DNA of 64,000 nt from contig NC_043012.1 of assembly GCF_006345805.1 (NCBI RefSeq), positions 12,400,001-12,464,000 on the forward strand, read 5' to 3'. This document shows positions 1 to 60,546 of this stretch, piece by piece; the stretch's first letter is position 1, and each line of letters begins with the position of its first letter. Source of the DNA: Octopus sinensis (lineage: Eukaryota). The notes beneath the pieces were generated by a model. The model worked only from the letters and a program-made list of their open reading frames with translations. It searched no databases and was not told the origin of the DNA. A program made the translations under genes and the position numbers.

Positions 1-35
1 GAGAATTCCTTAACCACAGTCTGTGCCTAGTCATG

Positions 36-64
36 ATCTTTCTTTCTTTTTTCTTTCTTTCTCC

Positions 65-98
<34 letters not shown>

Positions 99-470
99 AT
101 CTTTCTTTCTTTCTATTTCCCTTCACCCTTTCCTTCTTCGTTCCTTTCCTTCCTTCCTTCGTTCCTTGCTTGCTTCCTTCCTTCCCGTTCTTCATTCTTT
201 TTTCCTTCCGATTTTTCTTCGGTTCTGTCTTTCTTTCTCTTTTTCTATCTTTCTTCCGCTCTATTTCCTTCCTTCCCTATTTCATTCATCTATTCTTTCT
301 TTCATTTTTTCCTTCTGTCCTTCCTTCCTTTCTTCCACACATCCATCCATCTATCCATCCATCCTTCCCTCTTGCCTTCCTTTTCTTTCTTCCTTCCTTC
401 CTTCCTTCCTTCCTTCCTTCCTTCCTTCATTCATTCATTCAATATCTATCATTCATTGCCACGAAATGTT
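36..470. repeat. Pyrimidine-rich compound simple repeat (TTTC/CCTT/CATC/CATT)n, intronic in VGLUT
   Basis: Runs of tttc, cctt, catc and catt read directly. The F/L/S/P-rich ORFs here are artefacts. Confidence 0.95.
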
Positions 471-584
471 GCTTCCTTCGGTTGTCAACATTGGTATTTA
501 GGATTCCGATCACGTGCCATCACACGTTGCAAAGAGCGAAATGTAACCGGAATGTCAACATGATTACTTAGCACGGTTTATAAC

Positions 585-1110
585 GTCTTCTTCTTCTTCT
601 CCTTCTTCTTCTTCTCCTTCTTCTTCTTCTCCTTCTTCTTCTTCTTCTACTTCTTCTTCTTTTTCTTTTTCTTTTTCTTCTTCTTCTTCTTCTACTTTTT
701 CTTTTTTCTTCTCTCTTCTTCTTTCTTCTTCTTCTCCTCCTTTTCCCCCCATTCCTCCCAGTTTTCTTCTTCTTCTTCTTCTTCTTCTTCTTCTTCTTCT
801 TCTCCTCCTCCTTTTTCCCCCATTCCTCCCCAGTTCTTCTTCTTCTTCTTCTTCTTCTTCGTTTTCCTCTTCTTCTTCTTCTTCTTTTTCTTTTTCTTCT
901 TCTTCTTCTTCTTCTTCTTCTTCTCCTCTTCTACTTCTTCTTCTTCTTCTTCTTCTCCTCCTTTTTCCCCCATTCCTCCCCAGTTCTTCTTCTTCTTCTT
1001 CTTCTTCTTCTTCTCCTCCTTTTTCCCCCATTCCTCCCCAGTTCTTCTTCTTCTTCTTCTTCTTCTTCTTCTTCTTCTTCTTCTTCTTCTTCTTCTTCTT
1101 CTTCTTCTTG
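585..1110. repeat. (TTC)n tract with an embedded ~30-nt higher-order unit (cctcct[c]tttttcccccattcctccccagtt) repeated 4 times
   Basis: Unit seen at about 735, 805, 955 and 1015, between pure TTC runs. Confidence 0.95.
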
Positions 1111-1677
1111 CTGCTGCTACCCTTATTATTGCTCTTACCATCATTAGTAATGTTTTTCATCGATCTCCAAGTCCATGCATTGTTGTTATTGGCACTATTC
1201 TTTCAATATTACATTTTAAAGTCTAAATGTTAACTTTCCCTTCCAATCGATCGCTGCCGAGAAATCGAACGTCTCTATCTCTTCTTCATAATTTCATTCT
1301 CTCTCTCTCTCCCTCTCTCACCCCTCTCTCTCTCCCTCTCTCACCCCTCTCTCTCGCCGTCTCCGTCTTTCTCGCTCTCTCCGCCCTCTCACTCTCTCAC
1401 TTTTAAGAAAAGTATAGGAGACTATTGAAAAGGTCAATTGATTCGGATTTTTTCTTACAAGAAATCATAAAACAAACCAAAATCACCCGTTTTGTATGTC
1501 TATTAGTATCATTATTGATTATTTTCGCTTTATCTATAGCGTACATAAACATATTCAGATTTTCAGGCAAAAGTGGTGTGGGAGAGATTTTCGAATGATT
1601 GACATCCATGGTGTGAAAAAAGGCAGGAAAAAAAAATCATTAACATATCGCTGCAAGTGTCTTTGTGGTTTTTTTCC

Positions 1678-3100: not shown

Positions 3101-3519
3101 TTTACTCTTTTCCTTTACTCTTTTACTTGTTTAAGCCATTTGACTGCGGCCATGCTGGAGTAACACCTTTAGTCGAGCAAATCGACCCCAGGACTTATTC
3201 TTTGAAAGCCTAGTACTTATTCTATCGGTCTATTTTGCCGAACCGCTAAGTTACGGGGACGTAAACGCACCAGCATCGGTTGTCACGCGATGTTGGGGGA
3301 CAAACACTGACACACAAACATACACACATATATATATATAATATACATATGTACCACAGGCTTCTTTCAGTTTCCGTCAACCAAATCCACTCACAAGGCT
3401 TTGGTCGGCCAAGAGGCTATAGCAGAAGACACTTGCCCTAGGTGCCACGGAGTGGGACTGAACGCGGAACCATGTGGTTGGTAAGCCAAGCTACTTACCA
3501 CACAGCCACTCCTGCGCCT
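3101..3519 (-). mobile_element. Near full-length tRNA-derived SINE (family B)
   Basis: Reverse complement closely matches 44280-44696, from aggcgcaggagtggctgtgtggtaag to gctccagcatggccgcagtcaaatg...acaagtaaaagag. Confidence 0.9.
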
Positions 3520-3732
3520 AATTTGTTCATAATTTTTATAACTCCGAGGTGGTTACAGTAATTTTACCACTAAGATACTGAGTTTCATTTAATCTGCCTA
3601 GTCCGCTTCGAACTTCTACTTAAGTTGATGATGTTGTGATTGGAGTTGATCTTGTTGATGGTGATGATGCTTTGTTAATATTCCCCTTCTTAGATACTGT
3701 AACTTAATTATGTGTTTCTTATTGAATTGCAG

Positions 3733-4014
3733 GATGTTAGCAGTTGGGAACACGTGTTTCTCATCGCAAGTATGGTACATTTCGGTGGTGTTATATTCTA
3801 CGCTATATTTGCATCAGGAGAATTACAACCGTGGGCTGAACCACCACCTGAAGACGAATGGAAACCAGAGGATACATTGAAAGGAGATTCCTATGACAAA
3901 ATGCCGGATTATGGAACTGTTAACGAAAACGGACCGGTGTATGAAACGAAGGAAGAGATGGTTCAGAGATATGCAAGACAACCTTCAGATGATTCGGAAC
4001 AAGAAAATTATTGA
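3733..4014 (+). CDS. VGLUT: Vesicular glutamate transporter, last coding exon (last TM helix and cytoplasmic tail)
   Basis: Acceptor ttgaattgcag|GAT, phase 0, compatible with the previous exon. [37 protein letters not shown] matches [36 protein letters not shown]. Stop TGA at 4012-4014. Confidence 0.97.
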
Positions 4015-34674: not shown

Positions 34675-34795
34675 TCTTTTACTCTTTTACTTGTTTCTGT
34701 TATTTGACTGCGGCCATGCTGGAGCACCGCCTTTAGTCGAGAAAATCGACCCCAGTACTTATTCTATCGGTCTTTTTTGCCGAACCGCTAAGTGA
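34675..34795 (-). mobile_element. SINE family B 3' part
   Basis: ttttacttgtttctgttatttgactgcggccatgctggagcaccgcctttagtcgag...ttgccgaaccgctaag. Confidence 0.85.
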
Positions 34796-35091
34796 CGGCG
34801 ATATAAAATCATACATAAAATCTTCAGGAAAAATGTTCTGATCAGCTAAGCAATCATCAGCTCAGCTGGATAAAACAAGTGTACTATGAACCCCGGCATT
34901 GCTAGAAATAAGAGTCATGTTGTCTTCCACTGTCAGTTAAAATAGTACATGTGCTTTATATGGCTAAAGAGTCTATGACTCCTATTTCTCGCTAGCAATT
35001 CCCGCTCAGACTGCACCTTTCATCACTTTTAGTGATGCCGAATTATATCCTTTTTGTTTTCAAATTGCATCTAGCCACCATGATTATATAC

Positions 35092-35217
<126 letters not shown>

Positions 35218-36327
35218 AATCAAGGAACGGCCATAATAGGCCATTCACCCACTAGAAATAACAGCCAAAGCTTCAACCGCAAAATAACATTAATTCCGTA
35301 AACCAGGAGAAAATTAAAAAACATTTACCCTGTAATTTCTTATACGATGCACCGTTTCATCTACTGTTTAATGGTAAACTAACCTGATTAAATTAAATCA
35401 AGCCAATCTTCCATAGGCCCTTAGATTCGTCAGTAAGAAATAGCCAGATCGGAACAGATATTTTCACGAGGCATTTCTGTCCCTGCCTCGGCAATATCTG
35501 ACCTAAAATTTTCAAATCATCGCACTCGCGCCAAATTTATCGGCAGCAAATAAATATAAGCCGCCGATTCCATTACGGAATTAACCAGAAAATTCATAAT
35601 TAAATATATATATATATATATGTATGTATGTATGTATGCATGCATATATACATATGTGTGCATGTGTGCGATATCATATCGTTTAGGAATCAGGATCACT
35701 CCCGGATTGGAAATCTGCCTTTCATTTGGTTCTTTAACATCTAACACTGGAATCTTATCTAAAGGCATTTGGGTTACTGTTTCTAGCAGGTAAGGCGACC
35801 GTGTGAGGCAGAAGTGTTACCTCCTTTAGCTTTATGTTTTACTCAGGATTTTAGTGATTCTTTTACCATTTTCCAGTCTTCAGACTGCAGCCACGCTGGA
35901 GCACCGCCTTGAAGAGTTTCATTCGAACAAATCGAGACCAGTTCTTTCATTTTTATTGGCCTAATTTACCGAACTGCAAAGCTACATTAACGTAAACACA
36001 GCAACACCATTTATCAAGCGTTGTTGAAGGACAAACACAGACATAAAGTTCCAATACACACACACAACGCACTCGCGCGCACACATACACACATACACAT
36101 ATATTACTTCTATAAAAATTTTAAAGCAACTCCAAAAATTTGTGAAGTTACAAGTTTTTCATTTAAACTGACTTTAAAATAATGTCTCATTGTTGGTTAC
36201 CAATAAATACTTTATTATTAACACACTACCCAATTTTGGGCCGCAGGCGCAATTAACCCTCTGCAGGAGCCAGCATAAATATCCGCACGGAGTGCAGCAT
36301 TAAAGCTGGCACACACACATATATGTA

Positions 36328-44279: not shown

Positions 44280-44696
44280 AGGCGCAGGAGTGGCTGTGTG
44301 GTAAGTAGCTTGCTAACCAACCACATGGTTCCGGGTTCAGTCCCACTGCGTGACATCTTGGGCAAGTGTCTTCTGCTATAGCCCCGGGCCGACCAATGCC
44401 TTGTGAGTGGAGTTGGTTGACGGAAACTGAAAGAAGCCTGTTGTATATATGTGTATATATATATATGTATGTGTGTGTGTGTTTGTGTGTCTATGTTTGT
44501 CCCCCTAGCATTGCTTGAGAACAGATACTGGTGTGTTTTCGTCCCTATCAATTAGCGGTTCGGCAAAAGAGACCGATAGAATAAGTACTGGGCTTACAAA
44601 GAATAAGTCCCGGGGTCGATTTGCTCGACTAAAGGCAGTGCTCCAGCATGGCCGCAGTCAAATGACTGAAACAAGTAAAAGAGTAAGAGTAAGAGT
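44280..44696 (+). mobile_element. Full-length young tRNA-derived SINE (family B)
   Basis: Head aggcgcaggagtggctgtgtggtaag...gttccgggttcagtccc, internal TA/TG microsatellite, tail (aagagt)n. Confidence 0.92.
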
Positions 44697-50309: not shown

Positions 50310-51483
50310 AGTTGGGTCCATAAAATAGGATTTAACTACACCTCCATTTAGAGGAAAGTTTAAGCTATCTTTTCGTTGAAGAAGGTTTATGTTCCTATAA
50401 CCTGTGTTAATTCTGCAACCCTTTAAATGAAAGATAAGAAAGTTCATTTTCGGCACTTTATGCTTTTCCTTTTCCTTAAAGGGAAAAATGCCTCACAAAC
50501 AACCAAAGAAATATGTGCAGTTTATATTGATGTTTCTTTATCCAAAAGAACTGAACGGATGTGGTTCGCAAGGTTCCTAGCTGGAGATTGTAGCCTTTTT
50601 TATAAAGAGCGATCAAACAGACCATCCACTACTGATGATGACCAACTCAAGTCATTAATTGAGAATAACCTACATTGCACAACCCGAGAATTGGCAGAAA
50701 GCCTCAACCTATCAAAATCCGTCATTCATGAACACCTGGTAAAGCTTGGGTACACAAATCGCCACGTGTTTGAGTACCACATGAGCTGAGTGAGAAGAAC
50801 CTTTGGGATCGCATTTCCATCTGTGATTCGCTTTATAAACGGAATGAAAATGCGCCTTTTTTAAAGTAAATTTTGACAGGTGATGAGAAAGCGATTCTGG
50901 AGTAAGCGACATGAGTCACCCTTAGCCACTCCGAAGGCGGGTCTTCACTCTAGAAAGTCTTGCTTTGTGTCTGGTGGGATTGGACAGGAATTCTGTACTA
51001 TGAGCTATTTCCAAGTAACCAGACAATTAATTCTGAAAAATACTGCACACAACTGGACGAGTTAAAGCAGCAATTCAACAGAAACGTCCAGAATTGGCCA
51101 ACAGGAAGAGTGTTGCTTTCCAACATGATAATGCAAGACAGCACATTTCTTCGAGAACCAGAAAAAATTGCTGCAGCTCGGCTGGGATGTGTTACCCTAC
51201 CCTCCATATTCACCAGATATAGCCCCTTCGGATTCCGACTTATTCAGGTCTCTGCAGCATAGCCTTAATGGTAAAAATTTCAATTCCTTGGGTGACATAA
51301 AAAGATATCTTGACGAATTCTTTGCCATGAAGCCACCTAAATTCTAGGAAGAGGGTATTTTCAGGTTAAAGGAAAGATGGAGACACATTGTGCAACAAAA
51401 TGGTTTATATTTGGTTGAGTAAAATGTAATAGCAAGTATTTATTGGCCTTTTTCTGCACGAACTTTCTGGACAACCCAATATA
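50310..51483 (+). mobile_element. Near full-length defective mariner (mellifera-subfamily-like); transposase pseudogene 50427-51422
   Basis: MKDKKVHFRHFMLF...KGKNASQ, GDEK at 50879-50890, QHDNAR near 51121, PYSPDIAPSD and LFRSLQHSLNGKNF. Frameshifts and a deletion after GDEK. Right TIR reverse complement TATTGGGTTGTCCAGAAAGTTCGTGC ends about 51481; left TIR eroded. Confidence 0.93.
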
Positions 51484-52504: not shown

Positions 52505-52740
52505 ATACAATGGGCTTCTTCCAGTTTCCATCTATCAAATCTACTCACAAGGTTTTGGTCGGCCTGAAGCAATAGCAGCAGACAGTGTCTGGCCCCCAAC
52601 ATTGCTTGTCAACCGATGCTGGTCTGTTTACATCCCCGTAACTTAGCAGTTCTGTAAAAAGAGACCGATAGTATATGTACTACGCTTACAGAGAATAAGT
52701 CCTGGGGTCGATTTGCTCGGCTAAAATCGGTGCTCCATGT
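52505..52740. mobile_element. Rearranged SINE family B fragments (minus piece followed by plus piece)
   Basis: caaatctactcacaaggttttggtcggcc (minus) followed by cccccaacattgcttgtcaaccgatgctgg...gaataagtcctggggtcgatttgctcg (plus). Confidence 0.7.
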
Positions 52741-58146: not shown

Positions 58147-58526
58147 TATGTATGTATGTATATATATAATGCGTGTGTAGGTATGTATATAATACACAAG
58201 TGACGTATTGATTGGTATTCAAGATAATGTGTTTAAAGTCGTTCGACAGCAGACAGACAATTCTGTGAAAAAAGATCGATTTTTGTTCCGTTGTCATAAA
58301 ATGGTAGAGGACTCTTGCTGCTTTTGCTTAAGATTTCTTAAGATTTAAAGAAAACTGCTATGCGAATATACATGCAGACACACATATGTATATCTTTCTC
58401 TATCTCTCTGTCTCTGTCCCTCCCTCTCACTCTCTTAAACTCTCCCCCCTCTCTCTCTCTCTCTTTATATATATATATATATATATATTATTGAATGGAA
58501 GAAATGGAGTTGAACGAAGATTGTAC

Positions 58527-58638
58527 AGAATTCCTTTTATTACATTCTACACATGTGTCAAAGGCCACAAATTTCCAAATTCTGATTAAATAAGGGTACC
58601 ATATTGTGGCTTTCTCATCAGGAAAAAACAGGAATTCC
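58527..58638 (-). ncRNA. Mirror hammerhead copy with a core mutation GAAA to GACA (A14C), predicted inactive
   Basis: Reverse complement of the right-arm motif, except position 58557, which maps to core A14. Confidence 0.7.
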
Positions 58639-58716
58639 GTTGGCAGAACAAAACAGAACAGAGGCGCAGCAATTCGTTCGAATTGCTGCGCCTCTGTTCT
58701 GTTTTGTTCTGCCAAC

Positions 58717-58828
58717 GGAATTCCTGTTTTTTCCTGATGAGAAAGCCACAATATGGTACCCTTATTTAATCAGAATTTGGAAATTTGTGGCCTTTGAAAC
58801 ATGTGTAGAATGTAATAAAAGGAATTCT
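58717..58828 (+). ncRNA. Type I hammerhead ribozyme (Penelope-pLTR-like), predicted cleavage after GUA at 58807
   Basis: CTGATGA 58734-58740; stem II GAAAGCCACAA/TTGTGGCCTTT (58741-58751 with 58785-58795, one A-C mismatch); GAAA 58796-58799; stem III AC-AUGU-GU; H17 = A58807; stem I TTC/GAA, internal loop, then GAATTCCT(G)TTT/AAAAGGAATTC. Confidence 0.8.
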
Positions 58829-59018
58829 GTACAATCTTCGTTCAACTCCATTTCTTCCATTCAATAATAATATTAAACTTCAATTATCCGGACCAACGCA
58901 CGGTTGCAACACCAAATGGTCTTATCTCCAACCGTGTATTTTCTGCTGTGATTTTTGCTACCCAGGTATCGGTTAAACTTTTGAATAATCTGTAACAAGA
59001 AAATTCATCTTTCTATTT

Positions 59019-59094
<76 letters not shown>

Positions 59095-59240: not shown

Positions 59241-59560
59241 ACTCCGCCGGTTACGACGACGAGGGTCCCAGCTGATACGATCAACGGAACAGCTTGCTCG
59301 TGAAATTAACGTGCAAATGGCTGAGCATTCCACAGACACGTGTACCCTTAACGTAGTTCTCGGGGATAATCAGCGTGACACAGAGAGTGACAAGGCTGAC
59401 CCTTTGAAATACAAGTACAACTCATTTTTGCCAGCTGAGTGGACTGGAGCAACGTGAAATAAAGTGTCTTGCTCAAGGACACAACGCGTCGCCGGGAATC
59501 GAACTCACAACCTTACGATCATGAGCCGAATGCCCTAACCACTAAGCCACGCGCCCTCAC
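59241..59560 (-). mobile_element. Full-length tRNA-derived SINE (family D/C-related)
   Basis: Reverse complement head gtgagggcgcgtggcttagtggttagggcattcggctcatgatcgtaaggttgtgagttcgattcccgg with clear A box and B box, then gtgtccttgagcaagacac and a tail ending gtcgtcgtaaccggcggagt. Confidence 0.9.
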
Positions 59561-60344: not shown

Positions 60345-60546
60345 TTTCAGCTCTTGAGCTGTGGCCATGCTGGGGCACCGCCATTGTGGTGAAAGAGTAC
60401 AGCAGGAATCACCACCCCCTGCCGGAGCCTCGTAGAGCTTTTAGGTGTTTTCGCTCAATAAACACACACAACGCCCAGTCTGAGAATCGAAACCGCGATC
60501 CTGCGACCGCGAGTCCGCTGCCCTAACCACTAGGCCATTGCGCCTC
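60345..60546 (-). mobile_element. Short SINE: family C head joined to a B-like 3' terminus
   Basis: Head reverse complement gaggcgcaatggcctagtggttagggcagcggactcgcgg. Terminus ggcggtgccccagcatggccacagctc, also seen at about 10325-10358 and 29945-29978. Confidence 0.8.

What the first reader, a model, noticed from the sequence alone, without database searches (positions are those of the whole stretch)
58717..58828. Complete type I hammerhead ribozyme hidden in the right arm of a genomic palindrome
Seen in sequence: every core element is present in the correct order and register. CUGAUGA (58734-58740), an 11-bp stem II directly followed by GAAA (58796-58799), a short stem III (A58799-C58800 / G58805-U58806), a cleavable GUA triplet (cut after 58807), and a bipartite stem I (3 bp, 1x6 internal loop, about 11 bp) that could dock with the stem II loop. 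AATAAA follows at 58814-58819. Established: Penelope-like retroelement pseudo-LTRs in animals carry type I hammerheads with very short stem III next to polyadenylation signals. Inference: this is a Penelope-derived non-autonomous element, and the ~33-nt stem II loop makes it larger than the minimal metazoan hammerheads.
Basis: partly seen in the sequence, partly recalled or inferred. Interest (0 to 1): 0.9.

Follow-up and report, generated by a model that had tools for sequence, protein, structure and literature searches.

The report
Hammerhead ribozyme motif in retroelement palindrome
A 384-bp perfect palindrome next to a TA microsatellite in an animal genome carries a real-looking but unusual self-cleaving hammerhead RNA motif, most likely a dead relic of a Penelope-type retroelement insertion: a new example of a known kind of thing.

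Summary
Every hammerhead core element lies at the stated coordinates in type I order, inside the right arm of a 191+191-nt palindrome.

The motif is far beyond chance. A descriptor requiring a self-complementary helix III finds 2 loci in the window. Shuffles give 0.0005, and 719 permuted-core decoys give none. The second locus (35326-35448, minus strand) is an unrelated and sturdier hammerhead-like motif in a 386-nt unit between (TA)n arrays.

Corrections:
- Stem II is 10 bp plus one mismatch.
- The 10.1-11.1 pair is G.U or A-U, not the usual G-C.
- No Rfam hammerhead model matches, even at E<=10.
- The hammerhead fold lies about 9 kcal/mol above the minimum free energy (MFE).
- The only arm-to-arm difference turns GAAA into GACA (A14C) in the left-arm copy.

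Published features of Penelope-like elements (PLEs) match this locus: a weak palindromic helix III suited to dimers, inverted copies of 5'-truncated units, and AT-rich or microsatellite targets. No homologous copy and no RT/GIY-YIG ORF could be found, so the Penelope origin is plausible but unproven.

At this locus the ribozyme is probably inert, because a -338 kcal/mol hairpin outcompetes it. Self-cleavage is untested.

Verdict: new member of a known kind, moderate-to-low interest.

The parts
58486..58676 (-). Left arm of the palindrome: inverted copy of the right arm. On the minus strand it carries a mirror hammerhead motif with a broken core (GACA).
   Evidence: the repeat finder I1; blastn 99.5% over 191 nt; read on the minus strand.
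58677..58678 (.). 2-nt spacer (TT) at the centre of symmetry.
58679..58869 (+). Right arm of the palindrome. Inferred to be a 5'-truncated copy of an HHR-bearing retroelement, with its 3' end pointing outwards.
   Evidence: Orientation is inferred from the hammerhead strand. No poly(A) tail and no clear target-site duplication; ATATT at 58485-58489 and 58870-58874 is ambiguous.
58718..58733 (+). Helix I, 5' strand: distal 58718-58729 (G58726 bulged), U58730 unpaired, proximal 58731-58733.
   Evidence: Pair list printed.
58734..58740 (+). Core box C3-A9, CUGAUGA.
58741..58795 (+). Helix II (58741-58751 / 58785-58795): 10 bp plus an AxC mismatch, with a G.U or A-U closing pair and a 33-nt loop (58752-58784).
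58796..58799 (+). Core box G12 A13 A14 A15.1 (GAAA).
58799..58806 (+). Helix III with loop 3, ACAUGUGU: 2 bp plus a tetraloop in the monomer. The 8-mer is self-complementary, giving an 8-bp intermolecular helix in a dimer (-8.0 kcal/mol).
58807..58808 (+). Predicted scissile bond (GUA|G): H17 = A58807, N1.1 = G58808.
   Evidence: Follows from the register of the motif. Cleavage was not tested.
58808..58827 (+). Helix I, 3' strand: proximal 58808-58810, internal loop 58811-58816, distal 58817-58827. It overlaps AATAAA at 58814-58819.
58528..58637 (-). Mirror hammerhead-like domain in the left arm: CUGAUGA 58621-58615; GACA 58559-58556 (A14C; + strand G58557 against the T expected from symmetry); GUA 58550-58548.
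   Evidence: ORF translations differ by E/D at this site.
58466..58488 (.). (TA)n array abutting the left end of the palindrome; presumed insertion target.
   Evidence: Only about 2% of window positions lie within 6 nt of the edge of a (TA)>=6 run.
35215..35600 (-). Independent 386-nt unit between two (TA)n arrays that carries a second, sturdier type I hammerhead-like motif. Helix I is AUUUCUUA 35441-35434 with UAAGAAAU 35342-35335. Core CUGACGA is 35433-35427. The helix II base is 35426-35422 with 35363-35359, plus a 58-nt structured insert. GAAA is 35358-35355. Helix III is ACGGUGCAUCGU, 35355-35344. The cut would fall after A35343.
   Evidence: Found by the descriptor scan; read. Its HHR fold is 2.1 kcal/mol above the MFE and the unit folds with z = -4.6. 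No sequence homology to the palindrome arm.

Best explanation
The locus is a retroelement-derived insertion that was dead on arrival. About 190 nt of an RNA carrying a type I hammerhead ribozyme was reverse-transcribed into an AT-rich (TA)n target and ended up as a head-to-head inverted duplicate. That RNA was a Penelope-like element terminal (pLTR) region, or a small non-autonomous retrozyme-like derivative mobilised by a PLE.

How the palindrome formed (inferred): the symmetry is exact, with equal arms and a 2-nt spacer. This fits snap-back or template-switch copying of the nascent cDNA better than two independent primings on opposite strands.

What the ribozyme does (inferred from the family): in the source element the hammerhead has a 2-bp helix III inside a self-complementary 8-mer. 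It would pair with a second copy to form an extended helix III and cut after GUA. That releases unit-length RNA with 5'-OH and 2',3'-cyclic phosphate ends for circularisation and/or reverse transcription.

At this locus (inferred from the computed fold energies and the core change): the motif is a relic. A transcript spanning both arms folds into a near-perfect 191-bp hairpin, and the left copy already carries A14C.

What is shown and what is not:
- Shown: the motif, its non-random occurrence, the palindrome, the microsatellite context and the energetics.
- Inferred: retroelement origin, formation mechanism and dimeric cleavage.
- Untested: catalysis.
For: - All core nucleotides and three helices are in type I register.
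- The motif is enriched over nulls that keep composition (shuffles) and that keep real genomic structure (permuted-core decoys).
- A second, unrelated hammerhead-like motif with the same hallmarks was picked up by the same scan before I had read that region. It has a self-complementary helix III, a long helix II insert, an A-U 10.1-11.1 pair and (TA)n flanks. Its HHR fold is near the MFE and its unit is strongly structured, z = -4.6. So this genome does appear to carry hammerhead-bearing small elements.
- The helix III 8-mer self-pairs at -8.0 kcal/mol, as in dimeric PLE/animal hammerheads (PMC4209133; PMC6765202).
- PLE insertions are 5'-truncated, often with an adjacent inverted 5'-truncated copy and a bias for microsatellites (PMC8557442).
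- A purified PLE protein cuts and extends both target strands and prefers AT-rich/ATT sites (PMC11167929).
- Opposite-strand min-HHR pairs 100-700 bp apart are reported in S. mansoni.
- The palindrome abuts a (TA)n run.
- The arms are 99.5% identical, which indicates one recent event.
Against: - No hammerhead family of Rfam 15 matches either motif, even at E<=10 on short slices.
- The 10.1-11.1 pair is not G-C, although that pair is highly conserved in PLE min-HHRs.
- The HHR fold is 9.3 kcal/mol above the MFE and makes up about 1e-7 of the ensemble.
- The arm plus its downstream flank is no more structured than shuffles, z = +0.2.
- No other copy exists in the window or in any collection I could search, so there is no conservation or covariation evidence.
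- The ancestral state of the GAAA/GACA difference is unknown.
- No long non-repetitive ORF lies within about 4.5 kb and none looks like RT or GIY-YIG by eye. I did not run these pieces against Pfam.
- The descriptor thresholds were set after I had seen the candidate.
Confidence: 0.6

Rival explanations
1. The hammerhead is a chance look-alike. On this reading the palindrome is an ordinary foldback or MITE-like repeat, or a DNA-level inverted duplication, and the match arose by accident, possibly through the single C-to-A change that makes GAAA in the right arm.
For: - No Rfam hammerhead hit.
- Non-canonical 10.1-11.1 pair.
- The HHR fold is well above the MFE.
- One of the two copies reads GACA, and the ancestral state is unknown.
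- No homologues are available to show conservation.
Against: - Expected chance count is 0.004-0.015 per window with the relaxed descriptors and 0.0005 with the dimer-type descriptor, with 0 of 719 permuted-core decoys on the real sequence.
- A second independent motif of the same architecture lies in the same 64 kb.
- The self-complementary helix III and the microsatellite context are family hallmarks that I did not require in the first scan.
Confidence: 0.17
2. The functional unit is the hairpin, not the ribozyme. Transcripts across the palindrome would form a 191-bp double-stranded RNA that is processed into small RNAs (an hpRNA, endo-siRNA or piRNA source); alternatively the DNA palindrome itself matters. 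The hammerhead would be incidental cargo.
For: - The whole-palindrome RNA folds to -338 kcal/mol, against -175 kcal/mol when the HHR is forced.
- Generic long-hairpin miRNA-precursor models match the centre, for example MIR847 at 84 bits, far below its gathering score of 184.
Against: - Those Rfam matches reflect hairpin shape only and fall below every gathering threshold.
- There is no evidence of transcription or conservation.
- Near-identical arms indicate a young event, not a selected locus.
- This reading is compatible with the main explanation rather than exclusive of it.
Confidence: 0.1
3. The right-arm hammerhead is an active, domesticated monomeric ribozyme at this locus. It would process a host transcript, for example at the 3' end together with AATAAA.
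For: - Intact core in the right arm.
- AATAAA lies 7 nt downstream of the predicted cut.
- The long distal helix I (11 bp) could clamp the fold.
Against: - Helix III has only 2 bp and proximal helix I has three weak pairs.
- The HHR fold is about 1e-7 of the ensemble.
- The upstream left arm would sequester the whole domain.
- PLE-type hammerheads cleave poorly even as dimers.
- AATAAA is expected about every 650 nt per strand at this composition.
- No gene context supports it.
Confidence: 0.05
4. The palindrome is an assembly or sequencing artefact, such as a chimeric long read with a missed adapter or a foldback.
For: Near-perfect symmetry with a 2-nt spacer. PMC8557442 notes that complex PLE structures often cause assembly problems.
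Against: - It is short and internal to the sequence.
- Its two flanks are distinct, non-palindromic sequence.
- The arms differ at one base.
- Inverted PLE copies are a documented biological structure.
Confidence: 0.05

Closest known systems
Dimeric or minimal type I hammerheads of Penelope-like elements (Cervera & De la Pena 2014, PMC4209133; Lunse et al. 2017 as cited in PMC6765202)
   Same: - Type I topology.
- Very short helix III inside a self-complementary sequence, which implies cleavage as a dimer.
- Helix II longer than the canonical 4 bp.
- A possible extra nucleotide between A9 and 10.1 (G58741 in the alternative register).
- A bulge or mismatch within helix II, as in the D. virilis variant.
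- Occurrence as two copies on opposite strands a few hundred bp apart.
- Widespread solo copies with no ORF nearby.
   Different: - The 10.1-11.1 pair is G.U or A-U, not the highly conserved G-C.
- Helix II is 10-11 bp and carries a 33-nt loop.
- Helix I is bipartite with an 11-bp distal clamp, against 4-5 bp.
- No link to an RT/GIY-YIG element has been shown.
- No family of copies is available.
PLE insertion architecture: 5'-truncated copies, adjacent inverted 5'-truncated copy, pLTRs, microsatellite/AT-rich target (Craig et al. 2021, PMC8557442; PAc study, PMC11167929)
   Same: Inverted repeat made of two truncated copies, insertion next to (TA)n, no poly(A) tail, near-identical arms from a single event.
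   Different: - Here there is nothing except the two 191-nt arms: no full-length copy, no direct pLTR and no recognisable 30-40-bp tail.
- The exact symmetry suggests snap-back copying rather than two independent primings.
Metazoan non-LTR retrozymes: 170-400-nt hammerhead-bearing repeats expressed as circRNAs (Cervera & de la Pena 2020, PMC7229834). A 2026 preprint proposes them to be PLE derivatives (10.64898/2026.07.22.740005).
   Same: - Low GC and a type I hammerhead with a weak helix III.
- Unit sizes in range: the second element is 386 nt and strongly structured.
- Solo monomer copies are known.
   Different: - No direct tandem repeat here, so double cleavage and circularisation are impossible from this locus.
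- The palindromic arrangement is not described for retrozymes.
- The arm itself is not unusually structured.
Rfam Hammerhead_1 (RF00163) and the other Rfam hammerhead models
   Same: Core consensus and helix order.
   Different: No match at gathering score, or at E<=10. I presume, but did not test, that the long helix II inserts and minimal helix III are the cause.

Membership tests
Hammerhead ribozyme, type I | Conserved core C3 U4 G5 A6 N7 G8 A9 / G12 A13 A14 / A15.1-U16.1 / H17 in the correct order | tested here: met
   Right arm: CUGAUGA 58734-40, GAAA 58796-99, A58799-U58806, A58807. The left-arm copy fails this test (GACA).
Hammerhead ribozyme, type I | Three helices flanking the core, with helix I open and helices II and III closed | tested here: met
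   Helix I is 3 + 11 bp, helix II is 10 bp plus one mismatch, helix III is 2 bp. However, the fold is 9.3 kcal/mol above the MFE.
Hammerhead ribozyme, type I | G10.1-C11.1 pair at the base of helix II | tested here: not met
   G58741.U58795, or A58742-U58795 with G58741 unpaired.
Hammerhead ribozyme, type I | Match to a curated covariance model (Rfam hammerhead families) | tested here: not met
   No hit at gathering score or at E<=10 on 471-nt and 141-nt slices.
Hammerhead ribozyme, type I | Site-specific self-cleavage 3' of H17 | not testable with these tools
   Needs in-vitro transcription or RNA-end mapping.
Hammerhead ribozyme, type I | Core conservation and helix covariation among homologues | tested here: inconclusive
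   No homologue was found in the window or in the viral, metagenome, prokaryote-genome or protein collections. The host genome is not available here.
PLE-type dimeric/minimal hammerhead | Helix III absent or 1-2 bp, with palindromic 15.2-16.2 and loop 3 | tested here: met
   ACAUGUGU is self-complementary (two G.U pairs); self-duplex -8.0 kcal/mol.
PLE-type dimeric/minimal hammerhead | Extra nucleotide between A9 and 10.1, and enlarged helix II | tested here: inconclusive
   Helix II is enlarged. The extra nucleotide is present only in the alternative register, which is 0.5 kcal/mol less stable.
PLE-type dimeric/minimal hammerhead | Location in the pLTR of an element encoding RT plus GIY-YIG endonuclease, or sequence identity to such a pLTR | tested here: inconclusive
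   No ORF of 150 aa or more that is not low-complexity lies within about 4.5 kb, and none resembles RT/EN by eye. The palindrome ORF has no Pfam match. Solo copies without an ORF are the rule in published genomes, so absence here is not decisive. The autonomous partner cannot be searched for.
PLE insertion architecture | 5'-truncated copy with an adjacent inverted copy; AT-rich or microsatellite target | tested here: met
   Arms 58486-58676 / 58679-58869. (TA)n 58466-58488 abuts the left end.
Metazoan non-LTR retrozyme | Direct tandem repeats of a 170-400-bp hammerhead-bearing unit | tested here: not met
   No direct repeat of the arm in the window; the two copies are inverted.

The most novel reading that the evidence does not exclude
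The two motifs in this window may represent an undescribed lineage of animal hammerheads. Its members would have long structured helix II inserts and an A-U (or G.U) 10.1-11.1 pair, which would explain why current covariance models miss them. They would sit in non-autonomous elements of roughly 350-390 nt that target (TA)n microsatellites. In its palindromic form such an element encodes the same ribozyme on both strands. That gives an ambisense arrangement reminiscent of viroid-like RNAs, which carry ribozymes of both polarities.
Probability: 0.15. Interest if true: 0.55.

Novelty: new member of a known kind. Interest (0 to 1): 0.32.

Why it matters
If the motif is genuine, hammerhead-bearing retroelement relics exist in this AT-rich, microsatellite-laden animal genome in forms that Rfam models miss. 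Those forms have a long helix II and a non-G-C 10.1-11.1 pair, so standard annotation would undercount ribozymes in such genomes.

The perfectly symmetric, two-armed copy is also a clean natural record of how PLE-type reverse transcription can generate inverted repeats. Its one-base arm difference (A14C) provides a built-in active/inactive pair for a cleavage assay.

It does not open a new class of mechanism. Hammerheads in Penelope-like elements and retrozymes, their dimeric mode, and inverted PLE copies are all published.

Tried and rejected
1. Rfam at gathering score on the whole window, and at E<=10 on slices 58450-58920, 58700-58840 and 35300-35470. No hammerhead family matched. Only generic long-hairpin miRNA and sRNA models hit the palindrome centre, far below their thresholds, so I rejected these as hairpin-shape artefacts.
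2. Search for other copies:
 - blastn of the arm against the window: none.
 - The 87-aa ORF spanning the palindrome against 5.8 billion proteins: none.
 - Exact 19-22-mers in viral contigs: 0.
 - Prokaryote genome contigs: 0.
 - Metagenome contigs: 4 hits. blastn showed they share only the 20-22-mer, so they are chance matches.
3. Homology between the palindrome arm and the second hammerhead element: local alignment score 28 against 25.8 +/- 3.8 for shuffles, and the MAFFT alignment is poor. They are not the same family. The shared ATTTAATCAG in the helix II inserts is probably chance.
4. The idea that the 155 nt between the palindrome and the next (TA)n array (58870-59024) belongs to a 346-nt structured unit: z = +0.2, not supported.
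5. Organism identification through the SLC17/VGLUT-like exon: the best hit is an unnamed 86%-identical ORF on a Logan (public sequencing-run assembly) contig. The species stays unknown, and my impression of a cephalopod or mollusc rests only on repeat content.
I listed ORF pieces instead and scanned only four of them.
7. Supplements of the two key PLE papers and the Lunse et al. paper are not held, so I could not compare directly with published PLE hammerhead sequences.
8. AATAAA as a polyadenylation signal: not distinguishable from chance at 32% GC.

Full report
**1. What is there**

The window is AT-rich (32% GC) eukaryotic DNA packed with microsatellites (81 TRF rows). (TA)>=6 runs cover 4.1% of it. 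It holds a Mos1/mariner-like transposase remnant, an SLC17/VGLUT-like exon and a SINE-like repeat. The species could not be identified.

At 58486-58869 lies a 384-bp palindrome with arms 58486-58676 and 58679-58869. Each arm is 191 nt, there is one mismatch between them, and the spacer is 2 nt. Its left end abuts a (TA)n run at 58466-58488.

**2. The observation**

- CUGAUGA at 58734-40.
- Helix II, 58741-51 with 58785-95, closing a 33-nt loop.
- GAAA at 58796-99.
- Helix III, A58799-U58806 and C58800-G58805, with loop AUGU.
- GUA, with H17 = A58807.
- Helix I, made of 3 proximal pairs, a 1x6 internal loop and 11 distal pairs with one bulge.
- AATAAA at 58814-19.

Two corrections apply:
- Helix II is 10 bp plus an AxC mismatch, closed by G.U. 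A register that is nearly as stable leaves G58741 unpaired and closes with A-U (-7.9 vs -7.4 kcal/mol). Neither register gives the canonical G10.1-C11.1.
- The palindrome puts a mirror copy on the minus strand of the left arm. The single arm-to-arm mismatch (58557 against 58798) falls in the GAAA box, so that copy reads GACA, which is A14C.

**3. Is it more than chance?**

I wrote a descriptor with CUGANGA, 0-1 extra nucleotide, helix II, GAAA, helix III, U-H and helix I, and scanned both strands. At relaxed thresholds it found the candidate and one further locus that I had not looked at before, on the minus strand at 35326-35448.

| Descriptor | Observed | Shuffles (mean per window) | Permuted-core decoys on the real sequence |
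|---|---|---|---|
| Relaxed (I>=3, II>=4, III>=2 bp) | 2 | 0.015 (1000 block-wise dinucleotide shuffles) | 0.011 per decoy over 720 |
| Candidate-like (helix II >= 8 bp) | 1 | 0.004 | not run |
| Second-locus-like (helix I >= 6 bp) | 1 | 0.001 | not run |
| Dimer-type (15.1-16.1 segment self-complementary, >= 8 nt) | 2 | 0.0005 (2000 shuffles) | 0 of 719 |

In the relaxed decoy test the true core was the only one with two loci. The self-complementary helix III is the published hallmark of animal and PLE hammerheads.

One caveat: I chose the thresholds after seeing the candidate. The second locus, however, was an independent catch.

I conclude that the motif is very unlikely to be accidental.

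**4. The second motif**

The second motif is the better hammerhead:
- An 8-bp helix I.
- Core CUGACGA.
- A 5-bp helix II base that extends into a long imperfect hairpin (58-nt insert).
- GAAA.
- A 12-nt self-complementary helix III, ACGGUGCAUCGU.
- A GUA|U cleavage site.

Its hammerhead fold is only 2.1 kcal/mol above the MFE. The 386-nt unit that holds it lies exactly between two (TA)n arrays and is strongly structured, z = -4.6.

It shares no sequence with the palindrome arm beyond the core. It also has A-U at 10.1-11.1 and is also missed by Rfam. This shows that hammerhead-like motifs of this unusual build recur in this genome. That makes the non-canonical features of the candidate less damaging.

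**5. Weaknesses of the candidate**

- No Rfam hammerhead model matches at gathering score, or at E<=10 on 471-nt and 141-nt slices.
- The hammerhead-constrained fold of 58712-58833 is -19.1 kcal/mol against an MFE of -28.4. That is about 1e-7 of the ensemble.
- The MFE keeps distal helix I and most of helix II, but sequesters part of the CUGAUGA box in a small alternative hairpin.
- The arm with its downstream flank is no more structured than shuffles.
- A transcript covering both arms would fold into a hairpin of -338 kcal/mol, against -175 kcal/mol with the ribozyme forced.
The helix I internal loop is 3 bp from the core and the helix II loop is 11 bp away.
- No homologous copy could be obtained, so conservation and covariation, the usual proof, are missing. 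The ancestral state at the GAAA/GACA site is therefore unknown.

**6. What it most likely is**

Published descriptions fit closely.
- Animal and PLE hammerheads are type I. They have a 1-2-bp or absent helix III in a palindromic sequence, a longer helix II, often an extra nucleotide after A9, and weak cleavage that needs dimers. Pairs on opposite strands 100-700 bp apart were noted in S. mansoni (PMC4209133; PMC6765202).
- PLE insertions are heavily 5'-truncated, often with an adjacent inverted 5'-truncated copy that forms inverted repeats. They are biased towards microsatellites (PMC8557442).
- A purified PLE protein cuts and extends both target strands and prefers AT-rich/ATT sites (PMC11167929).
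- A 2026 preprint argues that animal retrozymes are non-autonomous PLE derivatives and that solo monomers are common.

My best explanation has confidence 0.6. About 190 nt of a hammerhead-bearing PLE terminal region, or of a small PLE-mobilised element, was reverse-transcribed into a (TA)n target and duplicated head-to-head in the same event.

The arms are exactly equal and the spacer is 2 nt. I therefore favour snap-back or template-switch copying of the nascent cDNA over two independent primings, which would give unequal arms. This is inference.

In the source element the ribozyme would act in pairs through an 8-bp intermolecular helix III (-8.0 kcal/mol) to release unit-length RNA. At this locus it is a relic.

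**7. Rivals**

- A chance look-alike in an unrelated foldback repeat (0.17).
- The hairpin as the functional unit, a small-RNA source (0.10; not exclusive of the main reading).
- A domesticated active monomeric ribozyme (0.05).
- An assembly artefact (0.05).

**8. Membership and novelty**

It works like, and very probably descends from, a type I hammerhead of the PLE/retrozyme kind.

| Outcome | Feature |
|---|---|
| Met | Core nucleotides |
| Met | Helix order |
| Met | Palindromic helix III |
| Met | Inverted-copy, AT-rich-target architecture |
| Not met | G10.1-C11.1 pair |
| Not met | Rfam hammerhead model match |
| Not met | Direct tandem repeats (retrozyme definition) |
| Untestable here or inconclusive | Self-cleavage |
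| Untestable here or inconclusive | Covariation among homologues |
| Untestable here or inconclusive | Link to an RT/GIY-YIG element |

I rate it a new member of a known kind, with moderate-to-low interest of 0.32. The more novel reading is a lineage of long-helix-II hammerheads that current models miss, sitting in elements that target microsatellites. I give that a probability of about 0.15.

No step had to be referred.

Noticed in passing
window 35215-35600 (minus strand); motif 35326-35448: A second, unrelated type I hammerhead-like motif: 8-bp helix I, CUGACGA, 58-nt structured helix II insert, 12-nt self-complementary helix III, GUA|U. It sits in a 386-nt, strongly structured unit (z = -4.6) lying exactly between two (TA)n arrays. 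It is more convincing than the reported one, and Rfam also misses it.
   Followed up: yes
window 58557 vs 58798: The only difference between the two palindrome arms falls in the hammerhead GAAA box. The left-arm copy reads GACA (A14C), which gives a natural inactive control. Which state is ancestral is unknown.
   Followed up: partly
window 50427-50789 and 50960-51262 (+): Remnants of a Mos1/mariner-type DNA transposase, split across frames: Pfam HTH_48 at E = 2e-18 and Transposase_1 at E = 5e-15.
   Followed up: partly
window 3712-4014 (+): ORF resembling the C-terminal exon of an SLC17/vesicular glutamate transporter. The best database hit is an unnamed 86%-identical Logan ORF; more distant hits are named VGLUT1 or sodium-dependent phosphate cotransporter-like.
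   Followed up: partly
window 34690-34800, 44548-44675, 3126-3256, 52636-52737, 35883-35981, 60354-60394: A dispersed repeat of about 110-130 nt (core GGCGGTGCTCCAGCATGGCCGCAGTC), in at least six diverged copies on both strands. It is probably a SINE. Two copies flank the second hammerhead element.
   Followed up: partly
window 59480-59555: A sequence that looks tRNA-derived (...GGGAATCGAACTCACAACCTTACGATCATGAGCCGAATGCCCTAACCACTAAGCCACGCGCC...) about 600 nt downstream of the palindrome. ARAGORN does not call it as a tRNA; it is probably a SINE head.
   Followed up: no
window 1-1400 and throughout: Extreme density of microsatellites: (TCT)n of about 520 bp at 586-1109, and many (TA)n, (ATT)n, (ATG)n and (CA)n arrays. 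There are 111 (TA)>=6 runs in 64 kb. Both hammerhead-bearing units abut (TA)n runs, although only about 2% of positions lie within 6 nt of a run edge.
   Followed up: partly
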